Assembly (NCBI GenBank): GCA_026770705.1
Contig: JANJGN010000121.1
Span: 310,001 to 374,000 of the forward strand
Length of the DNA: 64,000 bases
DNA from: Isurus oxyrinchus
Taxonomy: Eukaryota
Direction: 5' to 3'
Translations under genes and position numbers: made by a program
Part shown: positions 7,243 through 64,000 of the stretch, piece by piece
Layout: every line of letters starts with the position of its first letter
Numbering within the stretch: position 1 is the stretch's first letter
Notes under the pieces: generated by a model
Database searches by the model: none
What the model was told of the DNA's origin: nothing
Seen by the model: the letters and a program-made list of their open reading frames with translations, nothing else

Positions 7243-7382
7243 TCAAACAGTCTGTCGACTTCCTTTCACTGTTTGTCTCTCCCAGGCACAGACTCCAGCG
7301 ATAGTGATAACCACAGCCACAAGGAATATCACAGCTCGTATTCCCAGGATCAGGATCACGTGCAGAATCTCTCCTCCACTGT
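7243..7382 (-). CDS. Gene A TM/terminal exon SGGEILHVILILGIRAVIFLVAVVITIAGVCAWERQTVKGSRQTV*, with Arg in the TM and no Tyr motif
   Basis: ttctgtgtgttctctag acceptor, phase 1, hydrophobic run. CGA (Arg) at 7336-7338, TGA at 7243-7245. Confidence 0.8.
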
Positions 7383-9060
7383 CTAGAGAACACACAGAAA
7401 GAAATCATCACTGACTCTCCGCTTTCAATCTCTCACTCTGGCTGAACAATCAAGCTTCATATCACTGCAACATTTGCTGTAATATTGACCCATCCACTGG
7501 GATTCAATGTGGAATGAATGTTTTCATTGTAAACACTCGAAGAGTGGACAATTGGAACTTTCCCCTTAGCGTGGAACATTGGTGAGAATGGATCATTGTG
7601 CTGTTGGACTCCCTGTCCAATGTTTCTCTCCATCGCTGTGTACAGGATTGTGCTGTGGAAAATTCTGGAAACGTTTTGTGCAGGGTGGAAATTCATCTCG
7701 GACGTGTGTGCGAATCGGACAGGATCGAGATGGACTCCCCCACGGACTTACACCCCCCGCTTAATAAACAGTTCCAATCTTTACCCAGAGAGAGGGGAGA
7801 ATGTGGAACTCGCTCCCACAGGGAGTGGTTGAGGTGAACAGTATCGATGTATTTAAGGGGCAGGAGGGTCGGTAACCAGAGGGACACAGATTGACGAACC
7901 GGAGGGGGAGATGAGGAGAATTTGTTTTGACAGAGCGAGTTGTTGTGATCTGGAAGGTGCTGCCTGAAAGGGTGGTGGAAGCAGATTCAATAGGAACTTT
8001 CAAAAGGGAAATTGGATAAATACTTAAAGTAGGAAGATGGGGGCAAAGTGGAGTGGTGGTTAGTGGATCTGATTGGATAGAACATTGAAAGACCTGGCAC
8101 AGGCACAATGGACTGAATGGCCTCCTCCTGTGCTGTATCATTCTCCGTTTCCATGATCTCTCCCCCAGTCAGTAACGACTCCAGATCCCTCTTGAAGGCG
8201 ACAGAGAATCAGCAACCACCACACCCACTGACAACACATTGCCGAGGATCCCTACTCTCTGGGAAAAGATGAACTCCCCAACATCCAGCCTATTCCTGCT
8301 TCCCAGAGAGTGTAAACCCTTCAGGGAGGCGCTGAGGAAGTTTTCAATAAAATGACATCAAATCTACCGTTTGAGAAATAATTGAATTCCAATGAACTCA
8401 CAGCTTGTGTAGCAAACTGGGAAGTGGAGTTGCTTGAAAAGCTGGGAAACACAAGGATTAAGGGCTACAATGCCACCACTGGTGGGAGGCTGTAACTACA
8501 GCGTGACGTTTACATAGGCAATCCCCATTATGAACAAGGACATTGGACATCATGTGAAATATGGGCACTGGAAAGGTGAGAACATGATGTAAGCTTTTCA
8601 CCAACAGGAATTCTCCTCCTAAACCTCTCCACCTCTCTCTTACTCTCAAATACACAAAGAAAATCACACAAATCAGATAAGGAGGATTTGGGACCGGTGA
8701 TTGTTCGAAGGGTGAGCTTTCAGGAAGCTTCTTAAAGGGAGAGAGAGAGTTGGAGAGGCAGAGAGTATCTGTGAGAGTCTCTATGCATCTGAGTGTCTGT
8801 AATAGACTTTGTAATTTCCATATTCTTGCATAAATATGAATGGGAACACAAATCCCAGAATTCAGGCCAACTCTCCAGGGCAGTACTGAGGGAGGTCAGG
8901 TAGCCCACAGAGGAGTGTGTGTTAGTGTGTTTGTGTGTGAGTGTGTCTTTCTGTGTGGTCATATATGTGTGTCTGCATGTGTCTACTTAGATGTGTATGT
9001 TTGAGGGTGTTTGTGTAGTGTTCGAATCTGAGAGAGATGTTGAAGTCTGTGTACACTCAC

Positions 9061-9214
9061 GTTCCACAGTGATGGTTATGAATCCCTCCACTGCTCCATG
9101 TTCATTCTCTGCCACACACTGATAGTCTCCAGTGTCCCTGGATGTAACGTGAGGAATCACAAACCACAGCTCATTGTTGGAACTTGTTCTGTTCATTGGG
9201 ACATTAAGATGTCA
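9061..9214 (-). pseudogene. Gene A decapitated second C2 exon (3' half only, HLNVPMNRT...GFITITVE)
   Basis: Matches the 3' half of the gene C C2 repeats and keeps a C|gtgagt donor. The 5' half is replaced by unrelated sequence with an in-frame TGA at the junction. Confidence 0.8.
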
Positions 9215-9536
9215 GGGAGGGAATCAAGAACCCCGTTCACAGGATTACCAACAGAAAGTGAACAACAATTTATACTTAATGGGAAGAGAGTGCTGATTGG
9301 TTGGCAATTGGTCTCTGATAGGTGGCGGTGTTGCCATGGAGAATGGTGTGTGCGAGATGTAAAGTTTAGACAGCTTGTCTCTTTATTCAGCAATAATCAT
9401 ATAAAGATCAATTAACTTCTATCGACTTTGAAGCACTTAGAGAGGCCTTAGAATGTGGATACTGAGAATGGGCTGCACTGTCAGAGGGTCAGCGCTGAGG
9501 GAGTGCTGATGTGGAATGAATGGTGCATGTAATTAC

Positions 9537-9833
9537 CTTGCACAGTTAGTACGAGGGTCCGCTCCGATGAAACAGATGGATATCTCACTCTGCAGCTGAG
9601 AGTGTGTCCGTGGTGTTTGAGTGATGGGATCAGGGTCAGAACAGAAGTATAGGTCAGAGTGACACCATGCTGAGTTACAGTGTTTGAGACTGATCCAGGT
9701 ACGTCAGTGGGAGTGTCCCAGGTTAAGACAGGTGCTGCTGTTCCATTGCACGTTGTGTTGAAGGTGCAGCTCACATCCACACGCTTTCCTGCAATAATTT
9801 CAGCAGGGAATATCGTGGGTTTATCTGTGAAAT
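9537..9833 (-). CDS. Gene A C2-set Ig exon (Siglec domain 2) DFTDKPTIFPAEIIAGKRVDVSCTFNTTC...SCRVRYPSVSSERTLVLTVQ
   Basis: 297 nt, phase 1-1, tag/gtaatt boundaries. It has the extra B-C loop Cys used for the Siglec V-C2 interdomain disulfide. Confidence 0.9.
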
Positions 9834-10646
9834 CTAACAGACAGAGAATGGATCCTTTTAGAGAAATATAACATGAAGCATCAGTTCAAATAGAAAGCAC
9901 AGTCCCACAAGAGAAAGCACTTTTACAAGGATGATATCAGATCTGAGAGGATACAATGATCAGGAGAGAATTTCCTATTTTCAGACTTAGTGGAGTTTCT
10001 GTCACTCAGATGAATTCACTTCCACTTTGAGACAATTGAATTGACAATCCCAGGTGAGGGCGGGGGAGCAGCTCACAGTTCCTGACACAGTGGCTTGTTA
10101 CTTTCTCCGAAATCTGCCAGATTTAAATTCTATCCTGTCGCCAGCAGGAGAGAATCCATTTGAACCAATCACTGAACCGGCATCTAAAGCAGATGATCAG
10201 GTTATTGATCACATTGCTGTTTCTGGGAGCTTCCTGTGCACAAATTGGCTGCTGTGTGTCCTATATTACAACAAGGGCTACATTTCAAGAATTATTTCAA
10301 TGGTTGTGAATCCATTTGCGACATCCAGATGTGGTGAAAGGTGCTATAGAAATGCAAATCTTTCTTTTGTTGATATGTAAGAATTTTAAACAGGATTAGG
10401 TAGACTGATGGGAGTGGATAACCTGATAACATTGATGGACACAGTCAATACATTTAATCATTGATATTAAAGTGAGTATTAGAGGTTGTTTTAGGACTGA
10501 ACTGGAAGCTATTAGCAGGTTATTGAGAATCAGACAGTGTGTTATAATAAGCTGTGTTTTGTGTTAATATGTAAATGTCACAGTTCGTGTTATTTCCCAT
10601 TGAGTGTTGAATGTGAGTTGTTGAGTAATTATAACACAGCACTTAC

Positions 10647-11015
10647 CAGAAACGTGAAGCTGGGTTACAGGGTAATAGTTATGGCTCGGACCATTGTCAA
10701 ATTCTATTCTGAAAAAATAAGGTCCTGCATCTTCCCGTCTGATGTTGTTTATAATCAGGGAACAGTCGCCATCTTTCAGGTTTCCAGACAGCCGGGTCCG
10801 ATTGTGGAACCGTGGTAACTCGTGACTGTGATCCTTGGAGTGAAAGGCAATGGGAGCCCAGGGAATCTGTTCCTCATTATTAAACCAGACTCCACCTCGC
10901 GGTTGGTTTTCCAGACACGATGGATAACTGTAATGACATGGAATCTGTACACACGAACTTTCCTGTGCTGTCACCTCTCGTGGATTGTCACCTTTCCACT
11001 CTTGTGAGGGTTCAG
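10647..11015 (-). CDS. Gene A V-set exon V2 (essential Arg intact, extra Cys)
   Basis: 369 nt, phase 1-1. Siglec hallmarks: QEW, CVQIPC, DGDCSL, DAGPYFFRIE (no F-strand Cys, Arg AGA at 10708-10710). Confidence 0.92.
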
Positions 11016-11079
11016 CTGGGGAGAGAAATCTCAATATTGAACTCTGGATGGTTTGTGGATCCACTAGACTCAAAATTTA

Positions 11080-14360: not shown

Positions 14361-14738
14361 CAGAAACCTGAAGCTGGGTTACAGGGTAATAGTTATGGCT
14401 TGGACGATTGCCAAATTTTATCGTGAAAAAATAAGGTCCTGCATCTTCCCGTCTGATGTTGTTTATAATCAGGGAACAGTCGCCATCTTTCAGGTCTCCA
14501 GACAGCCGGGTCCGATGGCGGAACCGTGGTAACTCGTGACTGTGACCCTTGGAGTGAAAGGCTATAGACCATTTAGACCATTTGTTCCGTATGTAGCTTC
14601 TCATTTTCCAGATTCCGACATGTGGTTTCTTTACCAAATCTGATGGATAACTGTAATGACATGGAATCTGTACACACGAACCTTTCTGCGCTGTCACCTC
14701 TCGTGGAGTGTCACCTTTCCACTCTTGTGACAATCCAA
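14361..14738 (-). CDS. Gene A V-set exon V1 (essential Arg replaced by Thr, YFFTIKF)
   Basis: 378 nt, phase 1-1, tttctctccccag/gtaagt boundaries, open frame, Siglec Cys pattern. ACG at 14422-14424. Confidence 0.9.
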
Positions 14739-19148: not shown

Positions 19149-19188
19149 CTTGGAGAAGTGACAGGAGGAAGTAGGATTTCCCGATCAT
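19149..19188 (-). CDS. Gene A signal-peptide exon MIGKSYFLLSLLQ
   Basis: ATG at 19188 and G|gtaata donor. Phase 1 joins V1 to give ...LLQVGLS-QEW. Confidence 0.85.
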
Positions 19189-23133: not shown

Positions 23134-23273
23134 TTAAACAGTCTGTCGACTTCCTTTCACTGTTTGTCTCTCCCAGACACAGACTCCAGCGATAGTGATA
23201 ACCACAGCCACAAGGAATATCACAGCTCGTATTCCCAGGATCAGGATCACGTGCAGAATCTCTCCTCCACTGT
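23134..23273 (-). CDS. Gene B TM/terminal exon with TM Arg and tail WERQTVKGSRQTV*
   Basis: 140 nt like gene A. CGA at 23227-23229, TAA at 23134-23136. Confidence 0.75.
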
Positions 23274-24870: not shown

Positions 24871-25167
24871 CTTGCACAGTTAGTACGAGGGTCCGCTCCG
24901 ATGAAACAGATGGATATCTCACTCTGCAGCTGAGATTGTGTCCATGGTGTTTGAGTGATGGGATCAGGGTCAGAACAGAAGTATAGGTCAGAGTGACACC
25001 ATGCTGAGTTACAGTGTTTGAGACTGATCCAGGTACGTCAGTGGGAATGTCCCAGGTTAAGACAGGTGCTGCTGTTCCATTGCACGTTGTGTTGAAGGTG
25101 CAGCTTACATCCACACGCTTTCCTGCAATAATTTCAGCAGGGAATATCGTGGGTTTATCTGTGAAAT
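24871..25167 (-). CDS. Gene B C2-set exon (domain 2)
   Basis: 297 nt, phase 1-1, nearly identical to 9537-9833. Confidence 0.85.
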
Positions 25168-26890: not shown

Positions 26891-27258
26891 CAGAAACATG
26901 AAGCTGGGTTACAGGGTAATAGTTATGGCTCCGACCATTGTCAAATTCTATTCTGAAAAAAAAAGTCCTGCATCTCCCCATCTGATGTTGTTTATAATCA
27001 GAGAACAGTCGCCATCTTTCAGGTCTCCAGACAGCCGGGTCCGATGGTGGAACCGTGATAACTCGTGACTGTGATGCTTGGAGTGAAAGGCTATAGACAA
27101 TGTATTCCATTTGTCCCTCCTCATATTCCAGATTCCGACACGTGTTTTCTCTAACAAATGTGATGGGTAATTGTAATGACATGGAATCTGTACACATGAA
27201 CCTTTCTGTGCTGTCACCTCTCGTGGAGTGTTACTTTCCCATTCTTGTGACAGTCCAA
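26891..27258 (-). pseudogene. Gene B V-set exon with 1-nt frameshift in a T9 run
   Basis: 368 nt, not a multiple of 3. GGAC-T9-CAGA here versus GGACCTTATTTTTTCAGA in the intact copies. The domain is split over ORFs 26948-27277 and 26799-27197. Confidence 0.8.
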
Positions 27259-27936
27259 CTGGGGAGAGAAATATCAATATTTAAATCTTGATAATTTGTA
27301 GATCCACTAGACTCGATATCCACCCCCTCCATCACTGGGGCACATCGGCTGCTGTGTGGACCATCTACAGGACACACAAGGAACTCCACAAGGTATCACA
27401 ATGGTTAGAAGAGAATCCTGGACACAGGAGTTGACAAGATCATTCTACATTGGCTGATGGTCCTCAGGACCCTGTTTGTGCACAAGCCTGCTATCCAACA
27501 GAACTGAAGTTGGGGAAAATCCATTTGGAATTCCACTGTCCAGGGCATTGGGTTAACTTGCTGAGTTTGTTTTAAATCTAACATCTATTTTTGGACTGTT
27601 GCCTTAACGGGAGTGTAACTGGGAGTCAGGTTAATTAGGAATTTTAGGAGTTATTATAGCTGTCATTGTAGTCTTATGTATGTGCTTGAAATCTTTTATT
27701 TTGATGACAAATATTTTAATTTATTTTTTTAATTCTCTAAATTTCTTGGTGGACTTATTGCTTCTGAATTCAGTGCACACATCTCATAATAAATACAAAT
27801 TGCAAAATCATTATGATCATGTGACCACCTTTCTCTCAGGGACTTGGTCTGCCTGGCACACATCACCTGCCAAGTGATAACACTGCTGTAATATGCCTTT
27901 CAGGGATAGCAGCATGACATCACTCGAGGGGAAGTG

Positions 27937-33455: not shown

Positions 33456-33495
33456 CTTGGAGAAGTGACAGGAGGAAGTAAGATTTCCCGATCAT
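33456..33495 (-). CDS. Gene B proximal signal-peptide exon MIGKSYFLLSLLQ
   Basis: ATG at 33495 and G|gtaata donor. UTR exon 33946-34063 and GAGGAAGT at ~34078 lie upstream. Confidence 0.75.
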
Positions 33496-38418: not shown

Positions 38419-38535
38419 TTATAAATTCCCATAAACAGAATCCTTGGCAAATTCACAGTTTGCGTAAAGATCATCATCTGTATCAGGATTGACTCCGCGG
38501 TTAGATTTCATTTCCAGATCCTTCTCATCTTTCTT
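38419..38535 (-). CDS. Gene C terminal cytoplasmic exon KKDEKDLEMKSNRGVNPDTDDDLYANCEFAKDSVYGNL* (C-terminal ITIM SVYGNL)
   Basis: tttctgtttctattacag acceptor, phase 0, 39 codons to TAA. The other frames close early. Confidence 0.75.
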   Translation of the reverse strand, partial: KKDEKDLEMKSNRGVNPDTDDDLYANCEFAKDSVYGNL

Positions 38536-39790: not shown

Positions 39791-40095
39791 AAGATGTTCT
39801 GTACAACAGACTTGAGCCTCACACCCAGATCTCAATAATCAGTAGAAATCTTTCAAAGGCATCAATCATTGGAATCTGACTTTATAAAGTCACAACATCA
39901 ACAAAGGACGGTGTTGGTCATGGAAGTGAATTCCAATCGTTCCGTTACTTACCCAGGACCTGTCCGACTGCTCGCCTGGGGAGGAACTGCCCACACGCTC
40001 TGCTTGGGCTGAATGACCTCTTCCTGTGCTGCTCCCTCTGTGTATTTAATGAGAAAGGGTTGATGTGTCTCTGTGAGACAAAATCAGGAATTGGG
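39791..40095 (-). other. Orphan copy of the 5'UTR exon (39953-40070) inside the gene C TM-cytoplasmic intron
   Basis: Same 118-nt exon with cag/gtaagt. No leader exon follows. The PU.1 core is changed to CAGGAATT. Confidence 0.75.
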
Positions 40096-40739
40096 GAACA
40101 ATTGTGAAAACCCTTTCATTGAAACGTAGGGCCTTAGTGTTGTGTTGTAAACAAACTGTTAACCCTTTGTGTCCTGACTCTGTGGCGTGATTCCTGTGTA
40201 AAGCTGAGCAGTTGGTGAGCGAGTTTCAATTCACTGCTCAGTCCAGGTGTTGAGGTGGATCTTCTGAAGGAGCAGATGTAGCTCAGCGCTCCTTAAAAAT
40301 GTGAGAGACTGAACAACGTGTAAGAGGACGAGAGAGAGAATGAGAAGGAGAGCATTAGTGGAGATAAGAGCGAGTAAATGAGAGAGTGTATGAGAAGAGA
40401 GCATTAGTGGAGGTAAGAGAGAGTGAATGAAACATGGAAAAAGGAAAGAGATTGTATTCACTAACAAAAGAAAGGTTTTCATTTATATAGCGCCTTTCAC
40501 AAACTCAGGAGGTCACAAGGTATCTTATGGTCCGGGTCAACACTGCCTGTTACAGGACTGAGTTGTGAAACAGTGAGTGTTGGATGAGATGTTAAACAGT
40601 AGGTGAACATCAAAACTCTTCAGGGGCTGTGAAGCGTTTTGGATTGTAAAAGGTGCTATAGAAATGCAAGTTCTTTCTATAAGGAGAGAAGGTTGAAGAA
40701 AACATGTTCAAAAACAACCAATTAAACCTTCACACTTAC

Positions 40740-40836
40740 TTTCTCACACACTTGAAGATGAAGAATCCACTCAGTCCAACACTCAAACAGATTCCAGCTC
40801 CAAGCAATCCTGCTTTCCATTCATTGGAATCTCGCC
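40740..40836 (-). CDS. Gene C TM exon RDSNEWKAGLLGAGICLSVGLSGFFIFKCVRK (uncharged TM)
   Basis: 97 nt, tttacag/gtaagt boundaries, phase 1-2, paralog of 61547-61643. Confidence 0.85.
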
Positions 40837-41059
40837 CTGTAAAATCAGCCAATGAATGACTCCGGTACAGTTTGAGAATGGTTCCCTATGTCCATGTCGT
40901 GTTCTGAACTTGTGAAGTGATATTGTCTATGCATGAAAGGTCTATACAAATAACATTTATCTATGTAATATTTATTGATAATATCCATGTACATGCAGGT
41001 TTCTATAAGGAGGATTCACATATAACAGAGGTGCCAAGCTGCTGAGGTGACACACTGGA

Positions 41060-42099: not shown

Positions 42100-42381
42100 G
42101 TTCCACAGTGATGGTTATAAATCCCTCCACTGCTCCATGTTCATTCTCTGCCGCACACTGATAGTCTCCAGTGTCCCTGGATGTAACGTGAGGAATCACC
42201 AACCACAGCTCATTGTTGGAACTTGTTCTGTTCATTGGGACATTAAGATGTCACCACGTCAGGTTAGAAGCTGGGAAGCTTTCGACAGAGCAGATTATCA
42301 CTGCAGCATTTCCCTCAATTATATTGATCGATGAAGCGTTAATCATATCAAGAGAAGTAATTGATGGGTTCCGTGGTGCAT
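42100..42381 (-). pseudogene. Gene C C2 repeat 5: in-frame TGA and dead donor
   Basis: 282 nt. TGG TGA CAT at 42251-42253. Donor reads C|atgagt instead of gtgagt. Confidence 0.85.
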
Positions 42382-43352
42382 CTAAATACAAATAAAGGTT
42401 TCATTGTCAGCAAACACAGTGCACAGCAAGACTCCATGATACATCTCTCTCTATTTGGTGTCTATGTGCATTTCAAGAGTTCTTTCCTGTTTTAAGTTCC
42501 TGTGTCAACTTTTATAATGGTCACTGCCGGTGTTTTTCTTTTTGCACATTCATGGGAAGTGGATGTATCTATCTAGACCAGCATTTATTACCCATCCCTA
42601 ATTGCCCTTGAGGAGGTGGTGGTGAGTTTTTCACACCCATAGAATTCCCAGCCTCTGACCTGCTCCTGTAGCCACAGTATTTATGGCCGGTCCAGTTAGT
42701 AGTTTGGTTAACATCCCCCAGGATGTTGATTGTGGGGGATTCAGTGATAGTAAACTCACTGAACATCAAGGGGAGATGGTTAGATTCTCTCTTGTTGGAC
42801 ATGATCACTGCCTGGTAATTGTGATGCATTAATTGTCTCAGCCCAAGCTGAGTGTTATTCAGCTCTTGCTGCATGTGGATATGTAAACTGTCACGCTGTA
42901 ATTACAGCCATCTACCAGAGGAGACACTGTCGGTCTAGAAGAAAAGAAAATGTCTTTCACATCATCAGGATGTTCACAGGGATTTGACAGTGGAGGAATT
43001 GCTTTAGAATAATGGGGTATTGAGTGATAAACCTACAATTCTCTGTGCAGGGGGCTGCTCGTCCAATACAGGGTCTTGTTCAGCTGATGTCGTCAGTGTT
43101 TCAGAGCAGAATCTGGAGCAACACTCCAGTGCAGCACAGGGAGAACAGACAACACACACATGTCTGTGTGTGTGTGTGAGCAAGCACACGTGTGATTTTG
43201 TATGTATGCTTCTGTGTGTGAGCATGCAGGCGTGCACACCTGTGCACCTGTGGGATTCCACATGAATGCTTGTTTGTGTGCACGTGTGTATGAGTGTGTA
43301 TGAGTGTGTCTGTGTATATGTGAGAGTAATGTTGAAGCTTGTGTTAACTCAC

Positions 43353-43634
43353 GTTCCACAGTGATGGTTATGGACCCCTCTACTGCTCCATGTTCATTCT
43401 CTGCCACACACTGATAGTCTCCAGTGTCCCTGGATGTAACGTGAGGAATCACCAACCACAGCTCATTGTTGGAACTTGTTCTGTTCATTTGGACATTAAG
43501 ATGTCACCACGTCAGGTTAGAAGCTGGGAAGCTCTCGACAGAGCAGATTATCACTGCAGAATTCCCCTCAATTATATTGATCGATGAAGCGTTAATCATA
43601 TCAAGAGAATTAATTGAGAGATTCAATGGTGCAT
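43353..43634 (-). pseudogene. Gene C C2 repeat 4: in-frame TGA with intact splice sites
   Basis: 282 nt. TGA at 43504-43506 replaces Arg (CGA/CGC in the intact copies). Confidence 0.8.
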
Positions 43635-44279
43635 CTAAATATATGGAAAGATTTTAAAGTGAGCAACATAGTGCACAAGACGCCATGCATCATCTCTCTG
43701 TATCTGATGTCCGAATGCATTTCCAGATAACTTCCCTCAGGATAAGGTCTTATGGCACATTTATAATTGACACTGCTTATGTAAACTGTCACACTGCAGT
43801 TGCATTCTCCCACCAGTAGAGGTGTTGCCCATCTAGAATGAAAGAAGTTTGCTTTCACGTCCTCAGGATTTCGCAAAGGGCTTGACAGGCAATGTTTGAT
43901 TGAGGGAGCACTGAGGGGTAAATCTACAATTCTCTGTTCAGGAGGTTGCTCATCCAATTCAGGGTCTTGCTGATCTGGAGTTTACCGTCCTTCAACACAG
44001 AATCGGAGCTGATACCGAGACTCCAGTGCAGCACTGAGAACTCTCGCGTGTGTATGTGTGTGTTTGTGTTACTGCACATGTGAGTGTGTTTGTGTGTGTA
44101 TGCACACATGTAGCTGTGTGTGCGCATGCACGCGTGTCTGTGTGTCTACGTCTGTACATGAGTGAGAGTACGTGTATGTGTGTGTCTATGTGTGGGCATG
44201 AATATGTGTGTGTGTTTGAGATGGGTGTGTATTTTCCTGTGTATGTGTTTGTACGTGTATGACTGTCTGTGTATACTTA

Positions 44280-44469
44280 NNNNNNNNNNNNNNNNNNNNN
44301 NNNNNNNNNNNNNNNNNNNNNNNNNNNNNNNNNNNNNNNNNNNNNNNNNNNNNNNNNNNNNNNNNNNNNNNNNNNNNNNNNNNNNNNNNNNNNNNNNNNN
44401 NNNNNNNNNNNNNNNNNNNNNNNNNNNNNNNNNNNNNNNNNNNNNNNNNNNNNNNNNNNNNNNNNNNNN
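44280..44469. other. N gap; others at 46288-46447, 63303-63572 and 63604-63793
   Basis: Runs of n next to TG/CA repeats or minisatellite. The 63 kb gaps could hide gene D exons. Confidence 0.95.
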
Positions 44470-44477
44470 TAACTCAC

Positions 44478-44759
44478 ATTCCACAGTGATGGTTATGAAC
44501 CCCTCCACTGCTCCATGTTCATTCTCTGCCACACACTGATAGTCTCCAGTGTCCCTGGATGTAACGTGAGGAATCACCAACCACAGCTCATTGTTGGAAC
44601 TTGTTCTGTTCATTGGGACATTAAGATGTCGCCACGTCAGGTTAGAAGCTGGGAAGCTCTCGACAGAGCAGATTATCACTGCAGAATTCCCCTCAATTAT
44701 ATTGATCGATGAAGCGTTAATCATATCTGGAGAAGTAATTGAGAGATTCTGTGGAGCAT
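44478..44759 (-). CDS. Gene C C2 repeat 3 (intact)
   Basis: 282 nt, phase 1-1. DAPQN...CSVESFPASNLTWRH...DTGDYQCVAENEHG. Confidence 0.85.
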
Positions 44760-45507
44760 CTAAAAATAAATAAAGATTTTAATGTGAGCAAGCATAGTGC
44801 ACAGCAAGACTCCATGCATCATCTCTCTGTATCTGATGTTGGAATGCATTTCCAGGTACCTTCCCTCAGGAAAAAGTACTGTCACATTTATAATGGGCAC
44901 TTCCTATGTAAACTGTCACACTGCAGGGGCATTCTCCCACCAGTAGAGTTGCTGTCTATCTAGAATGAAAGAAACATCCTTTAACACTCTCAAGATGCCC
45001 CCAAGGGATTGAAAGCCCGTGAATTGTATTTGATTGATGGAGCACTGAGGGGTAAATCTACAATTCTCTGTTCAGGAAGTTGCTCATCCAATTCAGGGTC
45101 TTGCTGATCTGGAGTTTACCTTCCTTCAACACAGAATCAGAGCTGATACCAAGACTCCAGTGCGGCACTGAGAGAGGAGAGGGATCTCACACTTGTGTGT
45201 GTGTGTGTGTATTTCTGCACAAGTGAGTTTGTATTTGTGTGTATGCGCGTGTCTGTCTGCGCATGTGTGGGCACGCGTGTGTATGTGGGTCTTGTGTGTA
45301 CATCTGTGCTTGAGTGAGTGTGTGTGTATATGTGTGTCTACGTGTGCGCATGAATGATTGTATGTGTGAGTTGAGTTTGTGTGTGTTTCTGTGTATGTGT
45401 TTGAACGTATGTTTGTGTGTAAGCGTGCTTGTTTGTGTCTACACATGAGTGTTTTTGCATGTGTGTGTGTGTTTGTGTGTGTGATGTTGAAGTCTGTGTA
45501 CACTCAC

Positions 45508-45789
45508 ATTCCACAGTGATGGTTATGAACCCTTCCACTGCTCCATGTTCATTCTCTGCCACACACTGATAGTCTCCAGTGTCCCTGGATGTAACGTGAG
45601 GAATCACCAACCACAGCTCATTGTTGGAACTTGTTCTGTTCATTGGGACATTAAGATGGCGCCACGTCAGGTTAGAAGCTGGGAAGCTCTCGACAGAGCA
45701 GATTATCACTGCAGAATTCCCCTCAATTATATTGATCGATGAAGCATTAATCATACCAAGAGAAATAATTGAGACATTCTGTGGAGCAT
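45508..45789 (-). CDS. Gene C C2 repeat 2 (intact)
   Basis: 282 nt, phase 1-1, open frame in ORF 45338-45799. Confidence 0.85.
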
Positions 45790-46455
45790 CTAAAAACATA
45801 TAAAGATTTTAAAGTGAGCAAATATAGTGCACAGCAAGACTCCATGCATCATGTTTCTGTATCTGATGTCTGAATGCATTTCCAGGTACCTTCTCTCAGG
45901 ATAAGAACTTATTTCACATTTACAATGGGCACTGCCTATGTAAACTGTCACACTGCAGTTACATTCTCCCACCAGTGGAGGTGTCCATCTAGAATGCAGG
46001 AAACTCCCTTTCAGATCCTCAGGATGTCCCCAAGGGCTTCAAAGGCAATGAATTGTATTTGACCAATGGCGCACTGAGGGGTAAATCTACAATTCACTGT
46101 TCAGGAGGTTGCTCCAGCCAGTTCAGTGTCTTGATGATCGGGAGTTTACCTTTCATCAACAAAGATTCGGAGCTGATACTGAGACTCCAGTGCAGCCCTG
46201 AGAGAGGAGAGGGAACCCACATGTTTTTGTGTGTGTATGTGTGTGTTGGCTTGTGTGTGTATGTTTCTGTAAAATAAGGATCTGTGTNNNNNNNNNNNNN
46301 NNNNNNNNNNNNNNNNNNNNNNNNNNNNNNNNNNNNNNNNNNNNNNNNNNNNNNNNNNNNNNNNNNNNNNNNNNNNNNNNNNNNNNNNNNNNNNNNNNNN
46401 NNNNNNNNNNNNNNNNNNNNNNNNNNNNNNNNNNNNNNNNNNNNNNNTAACTCAC

Positions 46456-46548
46456 ATTCCACAGTGATGGTTATGAGCCCCTCAATTATATTGATCGATG
46501 AAGCATTAATCATATCAAGCGAAGTAAATGAGAGATTCTGTGGTGCAT
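46456..46548 (-). CDS. Gene C C2 repeat 1 collapsed to a 31-aa mini-exon DAPQNLSFTSLDMINASSINIIEGLITITVE
   Basis: 93 nt with both splice sites. A 189-nt in-frame deletion lies between two GAGGGG copies. It abuts an N gap. Confidence 0.55.
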
Positions 46549-46800: not shown

Positions 46801-47097
46801 CTTGCACAGTTAGTACGAGGGTCCGCTCCGATGAAACAGATGCATATCTCACTCTGCAGCTGAGAGTGTGTCCGTGGTGTTTGAGTGATGGGATCAGGGT
46901 CAGAACAGAAGTATAGGTCAGAGTGACACCATGATGAGTTACAGTGTTTGAGACTGATCCAGGTACGTCAGTGGGAGTGTCCCAGGTTAAGACAGGTGCT
47001 GCTGTTCCATTGCACGTTGTGTTGAAGGTGCAGCTTACATCCACACGCTTTCCTGCAATAATTTCAGCAGGGAATATCGTGGGTTTATCTGTGAAAT
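46801..47097 (-). CDS. Gene C C2-set exon (domain 2)
   Basis: 297 nt, phase 1-1, near-identical to domain 2 of genes A and B. Confidence 0.9.
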
Positions 47098-47955: not shown

Positions 47956-48321
47956 CAGACACGTGAAGCTGGGTTACAGGGTAATAGTTATGGCTCGGAC
48001 CATTGTCAAATTCTATTCTGAAAAAATAAGGTCCTGCATCTTCCCGTCTGATGTTGTTTATAATCAGGGAACAGTCGCCATCTTTCAGGTCTCCAGACAG
48101 CCGGGTCCGATGGTGGAACCGTGGTAACTCGTGACTGTGATCCTTGGAGTGAAAGGCTATAGACGATGTTCTCCATTCCTCATTATTAAACCAGATTCCA
48201 ACTCGTGGTTGGTTTTCCAAATGTGATGGATAACTGTAATGACATGGAATCTGTGCACACGAACTTTCCTGCGCTGTCACCTCTCGTGGAGTGTCACCTT
48301 TCCACTCTTGTGACATTCCAA
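47956..48321 (-). CDS. Gene C V-set sialic-acid-binding-type exon (Arg intact)
   Basis: 366 nt, phase 1-1. CAQIPC, DGDCSL, DAGPYFFRIE (AGA at 48017-48019). Confidence 0.92.
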
Positions 48322-51809: not shown

Positions 51810-51849
51810 CTTGAAGAAGTGACAGGAGGAAGTAAGATTTACCGATCAT
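51810..51849 (-). CDS. Gene C signal-peptide exon MIGKSYFLLSLLQ
   Basis: ATG at 51849 and G|gtaata donor. UTR exon 52300-52417 and AAAATGAGGAAGT at 52427-52440 lie upstream. Confidence 0.85.
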
Positions 51850-55785: not shown

Positions 55786-56034
55786 TCAGTTTCGCTTGAA
55801 TCTGATCTGTGCGTATTCCGTCTCCTCTTCCCTGTGGACAGACCCATCACCACTGGGCACCCTGAAGACTTGGGGATTGGCGTAGAGAAGGTCGTTGGGA
55901 TTGTCAGGGATTCCATGTCCAGCATCGCCTCCCAGTGCACCTTCAGAGAGACCCCAGGGAGCTGGGGTCTCCCCCTCACTAGTTGTTTCTCTGGTTGTTT
56001 TCCGGGGCTCAGTAATCAGCACGTTCTGTTTACC
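55786..56034 (-). CDS. Gene D terminal cytoplasmic exon, distal copy (...NDLLYANPQVFRV...EEETEYAQIRFKRN*)
   Basis: tttccatttctctgtag acceptor, phase 0. TxYxxI motif. AATAAA on the minus strand at 55201-55206. Confidence 0.8.
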   Translation of the reverse strand, partial: GKQNVLITEPRKTTRETTSEGETPAPWGLSEGALGGDAGHGIPDNPNDLLYANPQVFRVPSGDGSVHREEETEYAQIRFKRN

Positions 56035-58440: not shown

Positions 58441-58482
<42 letters not shown>

Positions 58483-58679: not shown

Positions 58680-58928
58680 TCAGTTATGCTCGAACCTGAT
58701 CTGTGCGTATTCCGTCTCCTCTTCCCTGTGGACAGACCCATCACCACTGGAAACCCTCAAAACTTGGGGATTGGCGTAGAGAAGCTCGGCGGGATTGTCG
58801 GCGTTCCCATGTCCAGCATCGCCTCCCACTGGACCTTCAGAGAGACCCCGGGGAGCTGGGGTCTCCCCCTCACTAGTTGTGTCTCTGGTTGTGTTCCGGG
58901 GCTCAGTAATCAGCACGTTCTGTTTACC
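58680..58928 (-). CDS. Gene D terminal cytoplasmic exon, proximal copy (...AELLYANPQVLRV...EEETEYAQIRFEHN*)
   Basis: Same boundaries as the distal copy. AATAAA on the minus strand at 58099-58104. Confidence 0.8.
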   Translation of the reverse strand, partial: GKQNVLITEPRNTTRDTTSEGETPAPRGLSEGPVGGDAGHGNADNPAELLYANPQVLRVSSGDGSVHREEETEYAQIRFEHN

Positions 58929-60491: not shown

Positions 60492-60573
60492 CTGGTGCTT
60501 CACAGAGAGTGGACTGGGGGTCAATGCAATGTCACTGGTCCCTGAAACTCTCTCCTCCATCGCTGTCTTTCTC
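60492..60573 (-). CDS. Gene D juxtamembrane cytoplasmic exon, proximal copy
   Basis: 82 nt, phase 2-0, same peptide as 57400-57481. Confidence 0.8.
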
Positions 60574-61546
60574 CTGCAATAACACAATATCACACTGTGG
60601 TTATCATATAGCAGAGAGTCAGTGCAGCACAGACACAGAGCCCTCTGTAACCTTACACCAACGACTGGACTGTCTCTTTAAATCACTTCTGCACAAAGCA
60701 CAGAATTAAGAAGCTCGACACCATCCAGGACAAAGCAGCCCGATTGATCTACACCCCATCCAACACATTAAACATTCACTCCCTCCACCATGAACACACA
60801 GTGGCAGCAGTGTGTGTACCATCTACAAGATGCACTGCAGCAACTCAGCAAGGCTCCTTCAACAGCACCTTCCAAACCCACGACCTCTACCATCTAGAAG
60901 GACAAGGGCAGCAGACACATGGGAACACCACCACCTGGAAGTTCCCCTCCAAGTCACTCACCATCCTGACTTGGAAATATATCACCGTTCCTTCACTGTC
61001 GCTGGGTTAACATCCTGGAGCTCTCTCTCTAACAGCACTGTGGGTGTACCTACACCACATGGACTGCAGCGGGTCAAGAAGGCAGCTCACTACCTCCTTC
61101 TCAAGGGGCAATTAGAGATGGGCAATTAATATCGGCCTCACCAGTGACAGCCAGATTCGATTAAAGAATTAAAAATCTCACAGCTCAGGAGGAAGCCACT
61201 CAGCCCATCGTGCCTGTGCTGGCCCTTTGAAAAAACTGTCGAAATAGTCCCAATACCCAGACTGTTCAATCATTCCTGATGGTTATAACCACCACTCCGG
61301 TTGTGTGGAATCACAAGGTGACCTGATACAATCCAGGAGTAATCGTGCAGAGTGAGGAATCTCTGGTTCTCCTGATCGTTTACCTGGATACAGGACAATG
61401 AAAGGTTCTCTCCGGATCAGAGTGGACACAGGGACCACTTACAGAGAGGGACCTGGTGCTGATCCCAAGGGAAACAATCACCGACTTAAGGAAAGAACTT
61501 TGAAGTAAATATTTAAATTAAAATCAAGTTAAATCTTCAGACTTAC

Positions 61547-61643
61547 TTTCTCACACAGATGAAGATGAAGATTCCAGCCAGGAAAACACTCAACATGATC
61601 CCAGCCGTGAACAATCCTACTGTCCATTTACTGGAGTCTCTAC
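61547..61643 (-). CDS. Gene D TM exon RDSSKWTVGLFTAGIMLSVFLAGIFIFICVRK (uncharged TM)
   Basis: 97 nt, tttttacag/gtaagt boundaries, phase 1-2. Confidence 0.85.
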
Positions 61644-62299
61644 CTGTAAAAACAGCCATTAATTACTGCACTACAGATTTACAATGATGCTCCGATGTAT
61701 CTCGAGAAGCGATACACTCACTCAGTGTTTAAATACTCATTCTCGGGCAATGCTGACATTTATTTTCCATCCCTACTTTCCCCTTGAGAAGGTGGTGGGG
61801 GGTCTTCCTCCTGAACCACTGGTTTGTCCCAAACTGGGAGACCAGTTCAGAGGGCAGGTAAGAGTTAACCATGTTGGTGTCTGAGACTGGAGTCACATAC
61901 ACACCCAGAACTTTTAAAATGGACAGGTTTTCCTCACTAAATGGACATTAGTGACCCACCCTATACATGTGATCTCTAAATACGTATCAAACAACCTCAT
62001 TAAAATAATACATTATCAGATCACTGTCACCTTGCTTTGTGGGATCTTGCTGTGCACAGGTTGGTGCCGTGTTTCCTACATTACAACATGACAATGCTTC
62101 AAACATATATCGTTGACTGTAAAGTGTTTCGTGACGATCTGGTCATTCAATAAATACAGGTCACCCTTTTCAATGTATCATTTATTGATAATTTGATCAA
62201 TGAAATATATGAATATTAATCAAACTCCAATTTCTGCCTGTTCACTGTTGACTAAAACCTGCCAAGACCCTGAGTCACATAAGGTGATGTCAGGGACAG

Positions 62300-63200
62300 A
62301 TGACCTTGTGAAGAGGGTGTAAGGAGGCTACAAATTGACAGAGAGAGGTTAAGTGAATGGGCAAAAAGTGCACAATGTGGGGAAATGTGAAATTGTCCAT
62401 TTTGACAGGGAGAATAAAAAAGTAGCTTATTATCTCAATGGTGAGAGATTGCAGAGCTCTGAGATTCAGAGGGATCTGGGTGTCCTAGTGCATGAATCAC
62501 AAAAGGTTAGTGTGCAGGAACAGCAGGTAATTCGGAAAGCGAATAGAATGTTATCATTTACTGTGAGGGGCATTGAATCCAAACGTAGGGAGGTTACACT
62601 TCAGTTATACAGGGGGCTGGGGAGACCACATCTGGAGCTTTGTGTTCAGTATTGGCCTCCTTATTTAGGGAAAGGTGTAAATGCATCAGGAGCAGTTCAG
62701 AGAAGGTTTATTGGACCAACACCAGGAATGGGCGGGTTGTCTTATGAGGACGGGCTGGACAAGTTAGACTTGTATCCACTGGCATTTAGAAGAGGAAGGG
62801 GAGACCTGATTGAGAGATTTAAGATCCTGAGGGGCCTTGACAGGGTGGATGTCGGGAGGATGTTTCCTCTTGTGGAAGAAGCTAGAACTAGGCGTCACTG
62901 ATTAAAAATAAGGGTTTGATCATTTATGACAGAGATGAGGAGAAAATGTTTCCTCTCAGAGGGTCGTGAGGCTTTGGAACTCTTCCTGAAAAGGCAGGAA
63001 ATAGAGTCTTTGAATATTTTTAAGGCGCAGCTCGATAGGTTCTTGATTCACAAAGGGGTGAAAGGTCATCAGGGGTGAGCAGGGAATGTGGGGTGGAGGT
63101 TACAATCAGGTCATCCATGACCTTATGGAAAGGTGGAACAGGCTCGAGGGGCTGAGTGGCCTCCTCCTGCTCCTCATTCCTGTGTTCGTATGTTTGTTTC
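62300..63200 (+). mobile_element. CR1 LINE 3' fragment
   Basis: ORF 62353-62901 contains YYLNGERLQSSEIQRDLGVLVHESQKV...LYRGLGRPHLELCVQYW. Confidence 0.9.
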
Positions 63201-63960
63201 ACCAAAAGCTTTGTCAAAGAGATCGGTTTTAAGGAGCGTCCAAACTGAATGTTTCAACACAGCCCAAAAACCAGGACAGTGATCCAGAGTGATCCAGTGT
63301 GGNNNNNNNNNNNNNNNNNNNNNNNNNNNNNNNNNNNNNNNNNNNNNNNNNNNNNNNNNNNNNNNNNNNNNNNNNNNNNNNNNNNNNNNNNNNNNNNNNN
63401 NNNNNNNNNNNNNNNNNNNNNNNNNNNNNNNNNNNNNNNNNNNNNNNNNNNNNNNNNNNNNNNNNNNNNNNNNNNNNNNNNNNNNNNNNNNNNNNNNNNN
63501 NNNNNNNNNNNNNNNNNNNNNNNNNNNNNNNNNNNNNNNNNNNNNNNNNNNNNNNNNNNNNNNNNNNNNNNNTCTAGGTGTGTATGTGTGCGTGCGTCTG
63601 TGTNNNNNNNNNNNNNNNNNNNNNNNNNNNNNNNNNNNNNNNNNNNNNNNNNNNNNNNNNNNNNNNNNNNNNNNNNNNNNNNNNNNNNNNNNNNNNNNNN
63701 NNNNNNNNNNNNNNNNNNNNNNNNNNNNNNNNNNNNNNNNNNNNNNNNNNNNNNNNNNNNNNNNNNNNNNNNNNNNNNNNNNNNNNNNNNNNNCTGCACT
63801 ATCGGGGGGTCAGTAGGAAGGGAGCTCTGCAATGTCAGAAGTGAATTTTTATCAATAAAAGCAGATGATCTATTGTTAAACAAACTGTAGTTTATGGGTT
63901 TTTACTGTGTACCATGTGGACTATAATGGCCAAATTAGAATAAAGGGTGTCTGTACTTAC

Positions 63961-64000
63961 CTTGTACAGTTAGTACGAGGGTCCGCTCCGATGAAACAGA
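63961..64000 (-). CDS. Gene D C2-set (domain 2) exon, 3' end only, truncated by the window edge
   Basis: SVSSERTLVLTVQ followed by G|gtaagt, matching the other domain-2 exons. Confidence 0.85.

What the first reader, a model, noticed from the sequence alone, without database searches (positions are those of the whole stretch)
7243..64000. Paired activating/inhibitory Siglec-like receptor cluster in a probable cartilaginous fish
Seen: four same-strand genes share near-identical leader and domain-2 exons and closely related V-set exons but have opposite signalling ends. Genes C and D have uncharged TMs with Tyr-motif tails (SVYGNL; TEYAQI). Genes A and B have an Arg-bearing TM and a 13-aa Tyr-free tail. 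Established: the V-set Cys pattern (two Cys in CxxIPC, E-strand Cys, no F-strand Cys, YFFR arginine) plus an extra C2 Cys defines Siglecs, and paired Siglecs (SIGLEC5/14, SIGLEC11/16) are known in primates as responses to sialylated pathogens. Inference: this is an independently evolved paired-Siglec system in sharks. I am not aware of a description but cannot search.
Basis: partly seen in the sequence, partly recalled or inferred. Interest (0 to 1): 0.88.

Follow-up and report, generated by a model that had tools for sequence, protein, structure and literature searches.

The report
Giant shark Siglec-like receptor gene family
The window is a slice of a very large, recently expanded family of Siglec-type immune receptor genes in a shark, in which almost identical outer domains are joined either to an arginine-bearing "activating" membrane anchor or to tyrosine-motif "inhibitory" tails. 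This matters because bony fish are reported to lack CD33-like Siglecs, and I found no paper on this shark family.

Summary
All genes are on the minus strand. Gene A has a leader, two V-set exons, a C2 exon and an Arg-TM exon. Gene B has the same 3' module, but its V exon carries a 1-bp deletion. Gene C has an uncharged TM and a tail ending SVYGNL. Gene D has a tail with LLYANP and TEYAQI, but its leader and V exon lie outside the window.

The V domain is Siglec-type by sequence, cysteine pattern, F-strand Arg and predicted fold. The 44 best PDB fold matches are all Siglecs. C2 exons are 98-99% identical in DNA between the activating-type and inhibitory-type genes.

Contigs from four transcriptome-sized public runs carry canonical GT..AG joints for V to C2 and for C2 to Arg-TM.

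The four genes are only a sample. The same genome holds about 800-1,100 V exons, at least 237 Arg-TM exons, at least 422 TEYAQI tails and about 140 SVYGNL tails.

RefSeq already names elasmobranch relatives "Siglec-n" or "CD33-like" automatically. I found no paper describing them.

Still untested: sialic-acid binding, signalling, what fraction are pseudogenes, and the true copy number.

The parts
19149..19188 (-). Gene A leader exon (MIGKSYFLLSLLQ, phase-1 donor)
   Evidence: Matches the N-termini of shark homologs.
14361..14738 (-). Gene A V-set exon 1 (V14). Begins with GLSQ. The F strand reads YFFT, so the essential Arg is replaced by Thr.
   Evidence: Pfam V-set and Ig_CD22.
10647..11015 (-). 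Gene A V-set exon 2 (V10). Begins with AEPSQ, the second-V type. YFFR is intact.
   Evidence: Its donor at 10647 is joined to C2 in RNA contigs of 4 runs.
9537..9833 (-). Gene A C2-set exon, with three Cys
   Evidence: Pfam C2-set_2. Joints 9833->10647 and 7382->9537. Matches MAG and CD33 domain 2.
9062..9211 (-). Gene A relic of the 3' half of an Ig3 exon, skipped in transcripts
   Evidence: The joint 7382->9537 skips it.
7243..7382 (-). Gene A terminal exon: Arg-bearing TM (..ILILGIRAVIFLV..), short Tyr-free tail and stop codon
   Evidence: Spliced to C2 in 4 runs. The same module is annotated in other sharks.
33456..33495 (-). Gene B leader exon. A second, variant leader copy lies at about 35591-35630.
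26892..27259 (-). Gene B V-set exon with a 1-bp deletion in a T run just before the YFFR position
24871..25167 (-). Gene B C2-set exon
23134..23273 (-). Gene B Arg-TM and short-tail terminal exon
51810..51849 (-). Gene C leader exon
47956..48321 (-). Gene C V-set exon (YFFR intact)
46801..47097 (-). Gene C C2-set exon
42101..46546 (-). Gene C tandem array of units about 1.1 kb long, each with an I-set-like Ig3 exon. Exons 45509-45787 and 44479-44757 are intact. Exons 43354-43632 and 42101-42379 carry an in-frame TGA. Exon 46460-46546 is truncated at a gap.
40739..40837 (-). Gene C uncharged TM exon
39953..40045 (-). Gene C cytoplasmic exon. Copies of this segment also sit about 0.5 kb upstream of every leader exon.
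38419..38535 (-). Gene C tail exon (..DLYANC..SVYGNL, then stop)
63962..64000 (-). Gene D, last 39 nt of the C2 exon. The rest of C2, the V exon and the leader are upstream, outside the window.
61546..61662 (-). Gene D uncharged TM exon
60492..60573 (-). Gene D cytoplasmic exon 1. A tandem duplicate lies at about 57400-57481.
58680..58928 (-). Gene D tail exon (LLYANP .. TEYAQIRF, then stop)
55786..56034 (-). Tandem duplicate of the gene D tail exon
   Evidence: A white shark model joins both copies.
3260..3299 (-). Leader exon of a further family gene. Its V exon lies beyond the window start, at C121:304052-304417.

Best explanation
The window holds three and a half to four and a half members of a very large, tandemly and segmentally duplicated family of Siglec-type (I-type lectin) immunoreceptor genes in a lamniform-like shark.

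The genes are modular. Each has:
- a shared leader exon;
- one or more Siglec-type V-set exons;
- a nearly invariant C2 exon;
- zero to several I-set-like Ig exons;
- one of three alternative 3' modules.

The three 3' modules are:
1. A transmembrane exon with a buried Arg and a 12-residue tail without Tyr. I infer that this recruits an Asp-bearing ITAM adaptor, such as an FcR-gamma-like or DAP12-like chain, and activates the cell.
2. An uncharged TM plus a tail with an (L)LYAxx motif and a distal TEYAQI ITSM/ITIM-like motif. This is the layout of CD33-related Siglec and CEACAM1 tails. I infer that it recruits SHP-type phosphatases and inhibits.
3. An uncharged TM plus a tail with DLYANC..SVYGNL. 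It is ITIM-like or Grb2-type, and its signalling sign is uncertain.

Shown here: exon structure, Siglec-type sequence and fold, near-identity of ectodomain exons across signalling types, splicing of V to C2 to Arg-TM in RNA-derived contigs, family size, and conservation of the Arg-TM module in three shark orders.

Inferred only: sialic-acid binding, adaptor pairing, and opposing signalling.
For: Siglec identity of the V domain:
- It matches Siglec-5, CD33, Siglec-8, sialoadhesin, MAG, Siglec-10, Siglec-7 and Siglec-15 at E 2e-13 to 4e-9. The first non-Siglec match is at 2e-6.
- A profile of elasmobranch V domains gives the same set.
- The AlphaFold model has pLDDT 89.5. Its 44 best PDB fold matches are all Siglecs, at TM 0.78-0.87. 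The Swiss-Prot fold search is led by MAG, Siglec-12, CD33 and sialoadhesin.
- The Cys pattern and the YFFR Arg align with Siglec-5 CVLVPC and YFFRVE. The extra C2 Cys aligns with MAG domain 2.

Gene structure and pairing:
- Exon maps come from tblastn with shark models, with canonical phase-1 splice sites.
- C2 exons are 98-99% identical in DNA and V exons 84-94% identical between Arg-TM genes and Tyr-tail genes.

Expression:
- Joints 9833->10647 and 7382->9537 both read GT..AG on the minus strand. Both occur in contigs of four transcriptome-sized runs from four studies. One contig has 1 mismatch in 320 nt.

Conservation:
- The Arg-TM module is present in annotated proteins of Carcharodon, Scyliorhinus (two species) and Chiloscyllium.

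Family size in this genome:
- The 36-nt V-exon core gives 806 matches against 0 for the control.
- First-look candidates number 1077 for V, 237 for Arg-TM, 422 for D tails and 141 for C tails. Nearly all scored copies have open frames.

Other support:
- The genome encodes FcR-gamma-like and CD3-zeta-like TM exons with the Asp.
- dN/dS over the V exon is about 0.4-0.5, so the copies are not evolving neutrally.
Against: - No binding or signalling data exist.
- Within the window, one V exon lacks the Arg (V14) and one is frameshifted (V27).
- Two of gene C's Ig3 exons have stop codons.
- The D tail's proximal motif (LLYANP) lacks the +3 hydrophobic residue of an ITIM.
- The -2 position of SVYGNL is not conserved in relatives.
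- The runs laid are marked only as "RNA?". They are contigs, and with hundreds of paralogs a spliced contig cannot be assigned to gene A itself.
- Splicing of V14 to V10 and of the inhibitory-type genes was not tested here.
- Copy counts may be inflated by assembly redundancy. Several contigs share terminal sequence, and contig C52 repeats itself at an offset of 1.036 Mb.
- No DAP12 gene was sought.
Confidence: 0.8

Rival explanations
1. The array is mostly evolutionary debris. A few functional Siglec-like genes were amplified by segmental duplication into multi-megabase arrays, and most copies, including some in this window, are pseudogenes or exon relics that are transcribed at most incidentally.
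For: - V27 is frameshifted.
- Two Ig3 exons carry TGA, and genes A and B keep only half-exon Ig3 relics.
- Cytoplasmic-exon relics sit upstream of every leader.
- Synonymous divergence outside the variable loops is low (dS 0.075), so the amplification or homogenisation is recent.
- Some scored copies carry stop codons.
Against: - The great majority of scored V, Arg-TM and tail exons keep open frames.
- dN/dS is about 0.4-0.5, not about 1.
- Spliced transcripts with exact exon borders are present in four runs, at depths well above the flanking introns.
- The modules are conserved across shark orders.
Confidence: 0.25
2. These are Siglec-fold receptors that do not recognise sialic acid as their main ligand. 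They would form a diversified innate receptor repertoire for proteins or other glycans, comparable in logic to chicken CHIR, teleost NITR and LITR, or KIR and LILR. The Siglec scaffold would then be ancestry rather than function.
For: - The family size is far beyond any known Siglec repertoire.
- Variation is concentrated in cassette-like blocks in the BC/C, C-C' and F-G segments.
- Multi-V architectures and 2.3-kb tandem arrays of V exons exist.
- One V exon in the window lacks the Arg.
Against: - The essential Arg is kept in 40 of 41 distinct sampled V exons.
- The variable C-C' and F-G regions are the loops that set glycan specificity in solved Siglecs. This point rests on established structural knowledge, not on a test here.
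Confidence: 0.2
3. The pairing is not binary. The C-type tail (Yxx[CW]-x7-Yxx[LIV], ending in YxN) would be an ITAM-like or Grb2-coupling module rather than an inhibitory one. The family would then have two activating or adaptor-coupling classes and one inhibitory class.
For: - The tail reads DLYANCEFAKDSVYGNL in the window.
- Relatives read DIYKSCVLSDDPVYVNV (white shark) and DIYANWNFQEEAVYGNI (bamboo shark).
- The x7 spacing and the YxN are conserved, while the -2 position required for an ITIM is not.
Against: - The first tyrosine motif lacks the L/I at +3 that a canonical ITAM needs.
- The window copy does fit S-x-Y-x-x-L.
Confidence: 0.3
4. The apparent copy number of hundreds is largely an assembly artefact, caused by uncollapsed haplotigs and redundant contigs. 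The true family would be tens of genes, as in annotated shark genomes.
For: - Identical-score hits recur at contig ends on four contigs, and at a fixed 1.036-Mb offset within C52.
- The family sits almost entirely on unplaced contigs.
- Annotated sharks show roughly 10-15 distinct protein clusters per species in the hit list.
Against: - The copies differ from each other, at 85-99% identity, and are not simple duplicates.
- Redundancy of two- to four-fold would still leave hundreds of V exons.
- The window itself carries five leaders and four V exons in 64 kb.
Confidence: 0.2

Closest known systems
Primate paired CD33-related Siglecs (Siglec-5/Siglec-14, Siglec-11/Siglec-16)
   Same: - The V-set is Siglec-type, with the essential Arg.
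- Linked genes have near-identical N-terminal Ig domains.
- One partner has Tyr-motif tails, and the other has a basic TM residue and a short tail.
- The tail layout is a proximal LxYAxx motif followed, some 20 residues on, by a distal TEY-type motif.
   Different: - There are hundreds of genes rather than single pairs.
- There are three 3' modules.
- The origin is independent and elasmobranch-specific.
- The proximal ITIM is degenerate in the window copies.
- No subgroup assignment is possible: scores to sialoadhesin, MAG and CD33-related Siglecs are about equal.
- The adaptor is unknown.
Siglec-12 (Siglec-XII), the only mammalian Siglec with two V-set domains
   Same: Gene A and many shark relatives have tandem V-set domains. 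In gene A the first V lacks the essential Arg, which echoes Arg loss in human Siglec-XII (from my own knowledge).
   Different: - Shark relatives reach three to four V-sets, and 2.3-kb tandem arrays of V exons exist.
- Gene A ends in an Arg-TM, not an ITIM tail.
Large lineage-specific activating/inhibitory Ig receptor families (chicken CHIR, teleost NITR and LITR, mammalian KIR and LILR)
   Same: - All are multi-megabase tandem arrays of recently duplicated Ig receptors.
- All have charged-TM and ITIM forms.
- All show pseudogenes, exon shuffling and gene conversion.
   Different: - The ectodomain here is a Siglec-type lectin V-set with an interdomain-disulfide Cys pattern. It is not a C2, NITR-V or LILR-type domain.
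- The apparent size of 800 or more V exons exceeds those families.
CEACAM1/CEACAM3 and PILR-alpha/beta paired receptors
   Same: - They follow the same paired logic.
- CEACAM1 has a similar ITIM-plus-ITSM tail layout.
- PILR also binds sialylated ligands. PILR V domains are weak sequence matches, at E about 1e-3.
   Different: The V-domain sequence and fold matches are clearly best to Siglecs.

Membership tests
Siglec (I-type lectin) family | N-terminal V-set Ig domain of the Siglec type | tested here: met
   - Pfam V-set and Ig_CD22.
- By phmmer against PDB, the 18 best molecules are all Siglecs.
- By Foldseek against PDB, ranks 1-44 are all Siglecs, at TM 0.78-0.87.
Siglec (I-type lectin) family | Unusual cysteine pattern: a B-E intrasheet pair, no F-strand Cys, and an extra V Cys matched by an extra Cys in domain 2 | tested here: met
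   - The V exon has C21, C26 and C83, all invariant across elasmobranch V domains, and no Cys in YFFRIEF.
- C2 has three Cys, which align with MAG domain 2.
- The disulfide bonds themselves cannot be tested here.
Siglec (I-type lectin) family | Essential Arg on the F strand | tested here: met
   - YFFR aligns with Siglec-5 YFFRVE.
- It is present in V10, V48 and gene D's V, and in 40 of 41 distinct sampled V exons.
- It is not met in V14 (YFFT). V27 is frameshifted just before it.
Siglec (I-type lectin) family | Binding of sialylated glycans | not testable with these tools
   This needs Fc-fusion glycan arrays with an Arg mutant as control.
CD33-related Siglec subgroup | Phylogenetic grouping with CD33-related Siglecs rather than with Siglec-1, CD22, MAG or Siglec-15 | tested here: inconclusive
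   - Profile scores are sialoadhesin 2.5e-20, Siglec-5 5e-19, MAG 9e-19, CD33 2e-17, Siglec-15 1e-10 and CD22 1e-7.
- The fold ranks mix MAG, CD33, sialoadhesin and Siglec-7.
- No curated mammalian sequences could be brought into a tree.
CD33-related Siglec subgroup | Cytoplasmic tail with a membrane-proximal ITIM and a distal ITIM-like (TEYSEV-type) motif | tested here: inconclusive
   - The distal TEYAQI is present.
- The proximal motif reads LLYANP in both window copies, which is not canonical.
- It is canonical in relatives: LLYTNI and LLYASI.
- The comparison with mammalian tails rests on my own knowledge, not on an alignment made here.
Paired activating/inhibitory receptors | Closely linked genes with highly similar ectodomains | tested here: met
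   The genes share one strand within 64 kb. C2 exons are 98-99% and V exons 84-94% identical in DNA between Arg-TM and Tyr-tail genes.
Paired activating/inhibitory receptors | One partner with a basic TM residue and short tail, the other with ITIM/ITSM tails | tested here: met
   The sequence features are present. Whether signalling is really opposed cannot be tested here.
Paired activating/inhibitory receptors | The activating form is really made, with the charged-TM exon spliced to the ectodomain exons | tested here: met
   Joints 7382->9537 and 9833->10647 (GT..AG) occur in contigs of four runs. This holds at family level, because paralogs cannot be excluded.
Paired activating/inhibitory receptors | An Asp-bearing ITAM adaptor is available and associates with the receptor | tested here: inconclusive
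   FcR-gamma-like and CD3-zeta-like TM exons with Asp exist in the genome. Association was not tested and DAP12 was not sought.

The most novel reading that the evidence does not exclude
Sharks, at least this lamniform-like species, may carry the largest known germline repertoire of lectin-type immunoreceptors. It would comprise several hundred expressed Siglec-like genes. Cassette-like variation in the ligand-specificity loops (C-C' and F-G) would be shuffled by gene conversion. Activating and inhibitory forms would share each ectodomain type. Together they would act as a diversified innate recognition system for sialoglycans of self and of pathogens. On this reading the CD33-type ITIM/ITSM tail dates back to the jawed-vertebrate ancestor, rather than being a tetrapod or mammalian innovation.
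Probability: 0.3. Interest if true: 0.85.

Novelty: new variant of a known kind. Interest (0 to 1): 0.7.

Why it matters
A paper on teleosts states that fish genomes lack CD33-related, ITIM-bearing Siglecs and have only Siglec-1, CD22, MAG and Siglec-15 (PMC7226832). It does not cover cartilaginous fish. Paired Siglecs are usually presented as recent primate responses to sialylated pathogens (PMC13358205).

A Siglec-type family in elasmobranchs would bear on both views, because it has:
- an Arg-TM module conserved across three shark orders;
- CD33/CEACAM1-like tails;
- multi-V architectures;
- hundreds of copies.

This would push back the origin of this receptor logic. It would add a new case of concerted evolution in immune gene arrays. 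It would also give a tractable system for asking how lectin specificity diversifies.

There is a practical point too. Automatic names such as "Siglec-12", "Siglec-13" or "Siglec-14" in shark RefSeq records do not reflect orthology.

Tried and rejected
1. A V-domain tree against curated SIGLEC1, CD22, MAG, SIGLEC15 and CD33-related sequences could not be built.
   - The word-indexed protein search returned only elasmobranch relatives for the shark query.
   - It returned only reptile and teleost models with automatic names for a turtle query.
   - Subgroup assignment is therefore left open.

2. Positive selection was not found.
   - Nei-Gojobori dN/dS on 38 V exons is 0.2-0.7 in the variable segments and 0.39 elsewhere.
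   - The variable segments have much higher dS (0.2-1.0 against 0.075).
   - This points to mosaic or gene-conversion structure rather than to detectable diversifying selection.
   - The sample is biased toward V48-like copies.

3. Literature searches found no description of this family. The term sets were Siglec plus shark, cartilaginous fish, elasmobranch or Chondrichthyes; CD33-related Siglecs plus fish plus paired receptors; and shark plus ITIM plus multigene family. One cited review (PMC3015071) is not held.

4. The idea that the V domain belongs to a non-Siglec V-set family (JAML, pIgR, MOG or PILR) is rejected. Those score lower by single-sequence search and by fold. JAML and pIgR rise in the profile search only through multi-domain sums.

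5. No Arg-TM form was seen among the ray and skate proteins fetched. The sample is small, so this is no evidence of absence.

7. Complex prediction was not used. A TM-to-TM contact prediction would not have changed my odds.

Full report
**What the window is.** The window has 45% G+C and a CpG observed/expected ratio of 0.31, so it is vertebrate-like. It corresponds to G000:C121:310001-374000 in a 4.98-Gb assembly of 5,558 contigs. The nearest proteins to its exons are all elasmobranch. They come from white shark, basking shark, two catsharks, smooth-hound, bamboo, zebra and epaulette sharks, and, more distantly, rays and skates. The closest matches are lamniform.

**Assembly gaps first.**
- Gaps 44280-44469 and 46288-46447 start 9-12 nt after the donor site of an Ig3 exon copy. 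They lie in CA-rich intron inside a tandem array of units about 1.1 kb long.
- Gaps 63303-63572 and 63604-63793 lie in the intron after gene D's C2 exon.
- No exon frame is read across a gap.
- What is lost is the true number of Ig3 units in gene C and the content between C2 and TM in gene D.

**Gene A (activating type).** All genes are on the minus strand.
- Leader with ATG at 19188.
- V14 at 14361-14738.
- V10 at 10647-11015.
- C2 at 9537-9833.
- A relic half Ig3 exon at 9062-9211.
- A terminal exon at 7243-7382. It encodes a TM with a buried Arg (ILILGIRAVIFLV) and a 12-residue Tyr-free tail.
- V10 begins with AEPSQ. This is the signature of a second V domain in the two-V models of Mustelus, and it fits the phase-1 junction after V14.
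- V14 reads YFFT in place of YFFR.

**Gene B (activating type).**
- Leader at 33495, plus a variant leader at about 35630.
- V27 at 26892-27259, with a 1-bp deletion in a T run. This is either a real frameshift or a homopolymer error.
- C2 at 24871-25167, an Ig3 relic, and Arg-TM at 23134-23273.

**Gene C (uncharged TM, C-type tail).**
- Leader at 51849, V48 at 47956-48321, C2 at 46801-47097.
- At least five Ig3 exon copies. Two are intact, two carry an in-frame TGA at the same codon, and one is truncated at a gap.
- Uncharged TM at 40739-40837, a cytoplasmic exon at 39953-40045, and a tail ending SVYGNL at 38419-38535.

**Gene D (uncharged TM, D-type tail).**
- The leader and V exon are outside the window, at L031:4930 and L031:1037-1504.
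- Only the last 39 nt of C2 are inside the window.
- Uncharged TM at 61546-61662.
- Cytoplasmic and tail exons follow, and are duplicated in tandem at 60492-60573 with 58680-58928, and at 57400-57481 with 55786-56034.
- The tails read LLYANP..TEYAQIRF.
- A white shark RefSeq model joins both tail copies into a doubled tail. The window has a GT right after TEYAQIR that could serve as the donor for this.

**A further gene.** A fifth leader at 3299 belongs to a gene whose V exon lies beyond the window start.

**Siglec character of the ectodomain.**
- The V exons hit Pfam V-set and the CD22 first-Ig model. C2 hits C2-set_2, and the Ig3 exon hits Ig_3 and I-set.
- Against PDB sequences, V48 matches Siglec-5 (2.4e-13), CD33, Siglec-8, sialoadhesin, MAG, Siglec-10, Siglec-7 and Siglec-15. 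The first non-Siglec match comes only at 2e-6.
- In that alignment CAQIPC pairs with CVLVPC, and GDCSL..YFFRIE pairs with KNCSL..YFFRVE.
- An 18-sequence elasmobranch V profile gives the same family. It does not prefer any subgroup: sialoadhesin 2.5e-20, Siglec-5 5e-19, MAG 9e-19, CD33 2e-17, Siglec-15 1e-10, CD22 1e-7.
- An AlphaFold model has pLDDT 89.5 and pTM 0.83. Its 44 best PDB fold matches are all Siglecs. In Swiss-Prot it is nearest to MAG, Siglec-12, CD33 and sialoadhesin.
- C2 aligns with domain 2 of MAG and CD33, including the extra Cys.
- Membership of the CD33-related subgroup is not settled.

**Pairing.** Between Arg-TM genes (A, B) and Tyr-tail genes (C, D):
- leader exons differ at 0-3 of 40 nt;
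- C2 exons are 98-99% identical in DNA;
- V exons are 84-94% identical in DNA.

Homology between A and C runs through the V-C2 intron and ends a few bases past the C2 donor. This is the pattern expected when one 5' module is joined to alternative 3' modules.

**Expression.** I laid contigs of four transcriptome-sized public runs on 7200-11100. The runs come from four studies and two coded organisms.
- All four carry a joint 9833->10647 and a joint 7382->9537. Both read CT..AC on the plus strand, which is GT..AG on the gene strand. Both lie exactly at the predicted exon borders.
- One 320-nt contig has a single mismatch.
- The Ig3 relic is skipped.
- Caveats: the runs are labelled only as probable RNA, these are contigs, and near-identical paralogs could be the source. 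The result holds for the family rather than for gene A alone.
- Loose ends also show leader-to-V and V-to-V junctions from paralogs.

**Conservation.** The same Arg-TM and short-tail module (..ILILGIRA..VKGSRQTV) ends annotated proteins of white shark, Scyliorhinus canicula, S. torazame and Chiloscyllium punctatum. It follows either C2 or an Ig3 domain. One of these proteins is automatically named "Siglec-14". Both Tyr-tail types also occur across sharks.

**Scale.**
- The 36-nt core of the V exon occurs 806 times in the genome with at most 3 mismatches. The reversed control occurs 0 times.
- Protein searches give 1,077 first-look V candidates. All 150 scored copies are at least 85% identical, and nearly all are open.
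- They give 237 Arg-TM candidates, with the scored copies at least 96% identical.
- They give 422 D-tail candidates, often as pairs 2.9 kb apart, and 141 C-tail candidates.
- Most lie on some 15 contigs that seem to consist largely of this family: C52 at 4.2 Mb, C71 at 2.5 Mb, C121 at 1.5 Mb, and others.
- Three further members sit on a 19.9-Mb contig at C34:15.13-15.19 Mb.
- Some V exons form 2.3-kb tandem arrays. This fits RefSeq models with three or four V domains.
- Identical hits recur at several contig ends and at a 1.036-Mb offset in C52. The assembly is therefore partly redundant, and the counts are approximate.

**Variation.** I compared 41 distinct V exons.
- Differences cluster in three segments: the BC/C segment, the C-C' segment and the F-G segment. 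They look like cassettes.
- dN/dS is 0.2-0.7 in those segments and 0.39 elsewhere.
- dS is far higher in the variable segments.
- I read this as mosaicism from gene conversion on a recently homogenised background, under moderate purifying selection. It is not evidence for or against an arms race.

**Mechanism.** The proposed mechanism is inferred from established knowledge of paired receptors.
- Arg-TM forms would pair with an Asp-bearing ITAM adaptor. The genome has FcR-gamma-like and CD3-zeta-like TM exons with the Asp.
- D-tail forms would recruit SH2 phosphatases through TEYAQI. In relatives they would also use a canonical LLY[AT][SN]I ITIM.
- The sign of the C tail is uncertain, because it has a YxN Grb2-type motif and ITAM-like spacing.

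**Prior knowledge.**
- A teleost study states that fish genomes lack CD33-related Siglecs (PMC7226832). It does not cover cartilaginous fish.
- The whale shark genome paper only lists Siglecs among gene families gained in jawed vertebrates (PMC8455134).
- A 2025 review of paired sialic-acid receptors names only Siglec-5/14, Siglec-11/16 and PILR (PMC13358205).
- I found no paper on shark Siglec pairs or on this expansion. RefSeq annotation already labels the relatives as Siglecs.
- Two earlier first-stage notes of this scan flag other Siglec-like genes elsewhere in this genome. I did not check them.

**Verdict.** This is a real, expressed, Siglec-type receptor family with activating-type and inhibitory-type members. 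It is a new variant of a known kind and merits follow-up.

Noticed in passing
window 4120-5799, 20009-21790, 56181-56379, 59072-59457: 33-bp minisatellites lie just downstream of the Arg-TM and D-tail terminal exons, and are repeated in each duplication unit. They create long spurious ORFs on both strands, with peptide repeats of the LHCQRVSTEGV type.
   Followed up: partly
window 11982-13114, 36325-37082, 38634-39207: Other tandem arrays are present: a 37-bp array in the V14-V10 intron, a 43-bp array, and a very regular 24-bp array (92% matches) right upstream of gene C's tail exon.
   Followed up: no
window 3750-3830, 19639-19725, 33931-34032, 36074-36154, 52300-52392: Copies of gene C's cytoplasmic exon (39953-40045) sit about 0.5 kb upstream of every leader exon. 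They look like relics of duplication units that ran from the 3' part of one gene into the 5' part of the next.
   Followed up: partly
window 6472-6897, 22550-22966, 62353-62901, 52600-53016: ORFs that look like reverse-transcriptase fragments of retroelements are interspersed between the receptor genes. They were not run against Pfam.
   Followed up: no
G000:C52:1879783-1884741 and C52:3547546-3554809: Tandem arrays of AEPSQ-type V-set exons occur at 2.3-kb spacing. They imply genes with three or more Siglec-type V domains. RefSeq models in catshark and stingray have 3-4 V domains.
   Followed up: partly
G000:C34:15129543-15189555: Three more family genes, with C-type tails, lie in tandem on a 19.9-Mb contig. 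One closely matches the white shark "CD33-like" model P0012. This may be the chromosomal home or founder locus of the family.
   Followed up: partly
G000:C1723:88553-88636 (same sequence at C1648:27629-27712) and G000:C18:75872273-75872359: These are TM exons of FcR-gamma-like (CYVLDAALFVYGIVLT) and CD3-zeta-like (CYILDGILFVYGIIVT) adaptors. They are candidate partners of the Arg-TM receptors. The FcR-gamma-like exon is present on two contigs with identical sequence.
   Followed up: partly
G000:C52 about 1.38-1.52 Mb versus 2.42-2.55 Mb; ends of C189, C323, C646 and C724: Identical-score hits recur at a constant 1.036-Mb offset within C52 and at the ends of four contigs. This is either a large recent segmental duplication or assembly redundancy, and it affects copy counts.
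   Followed up: no
window 58716-58722: An internal GT lies right after the TEYAQIR codons of the first D-tail exon. The white shark model P0152 splices from this point into the next cytoplasmic exon, which gives a doubled ITIM/ITSM tail.
   Followed up: partly
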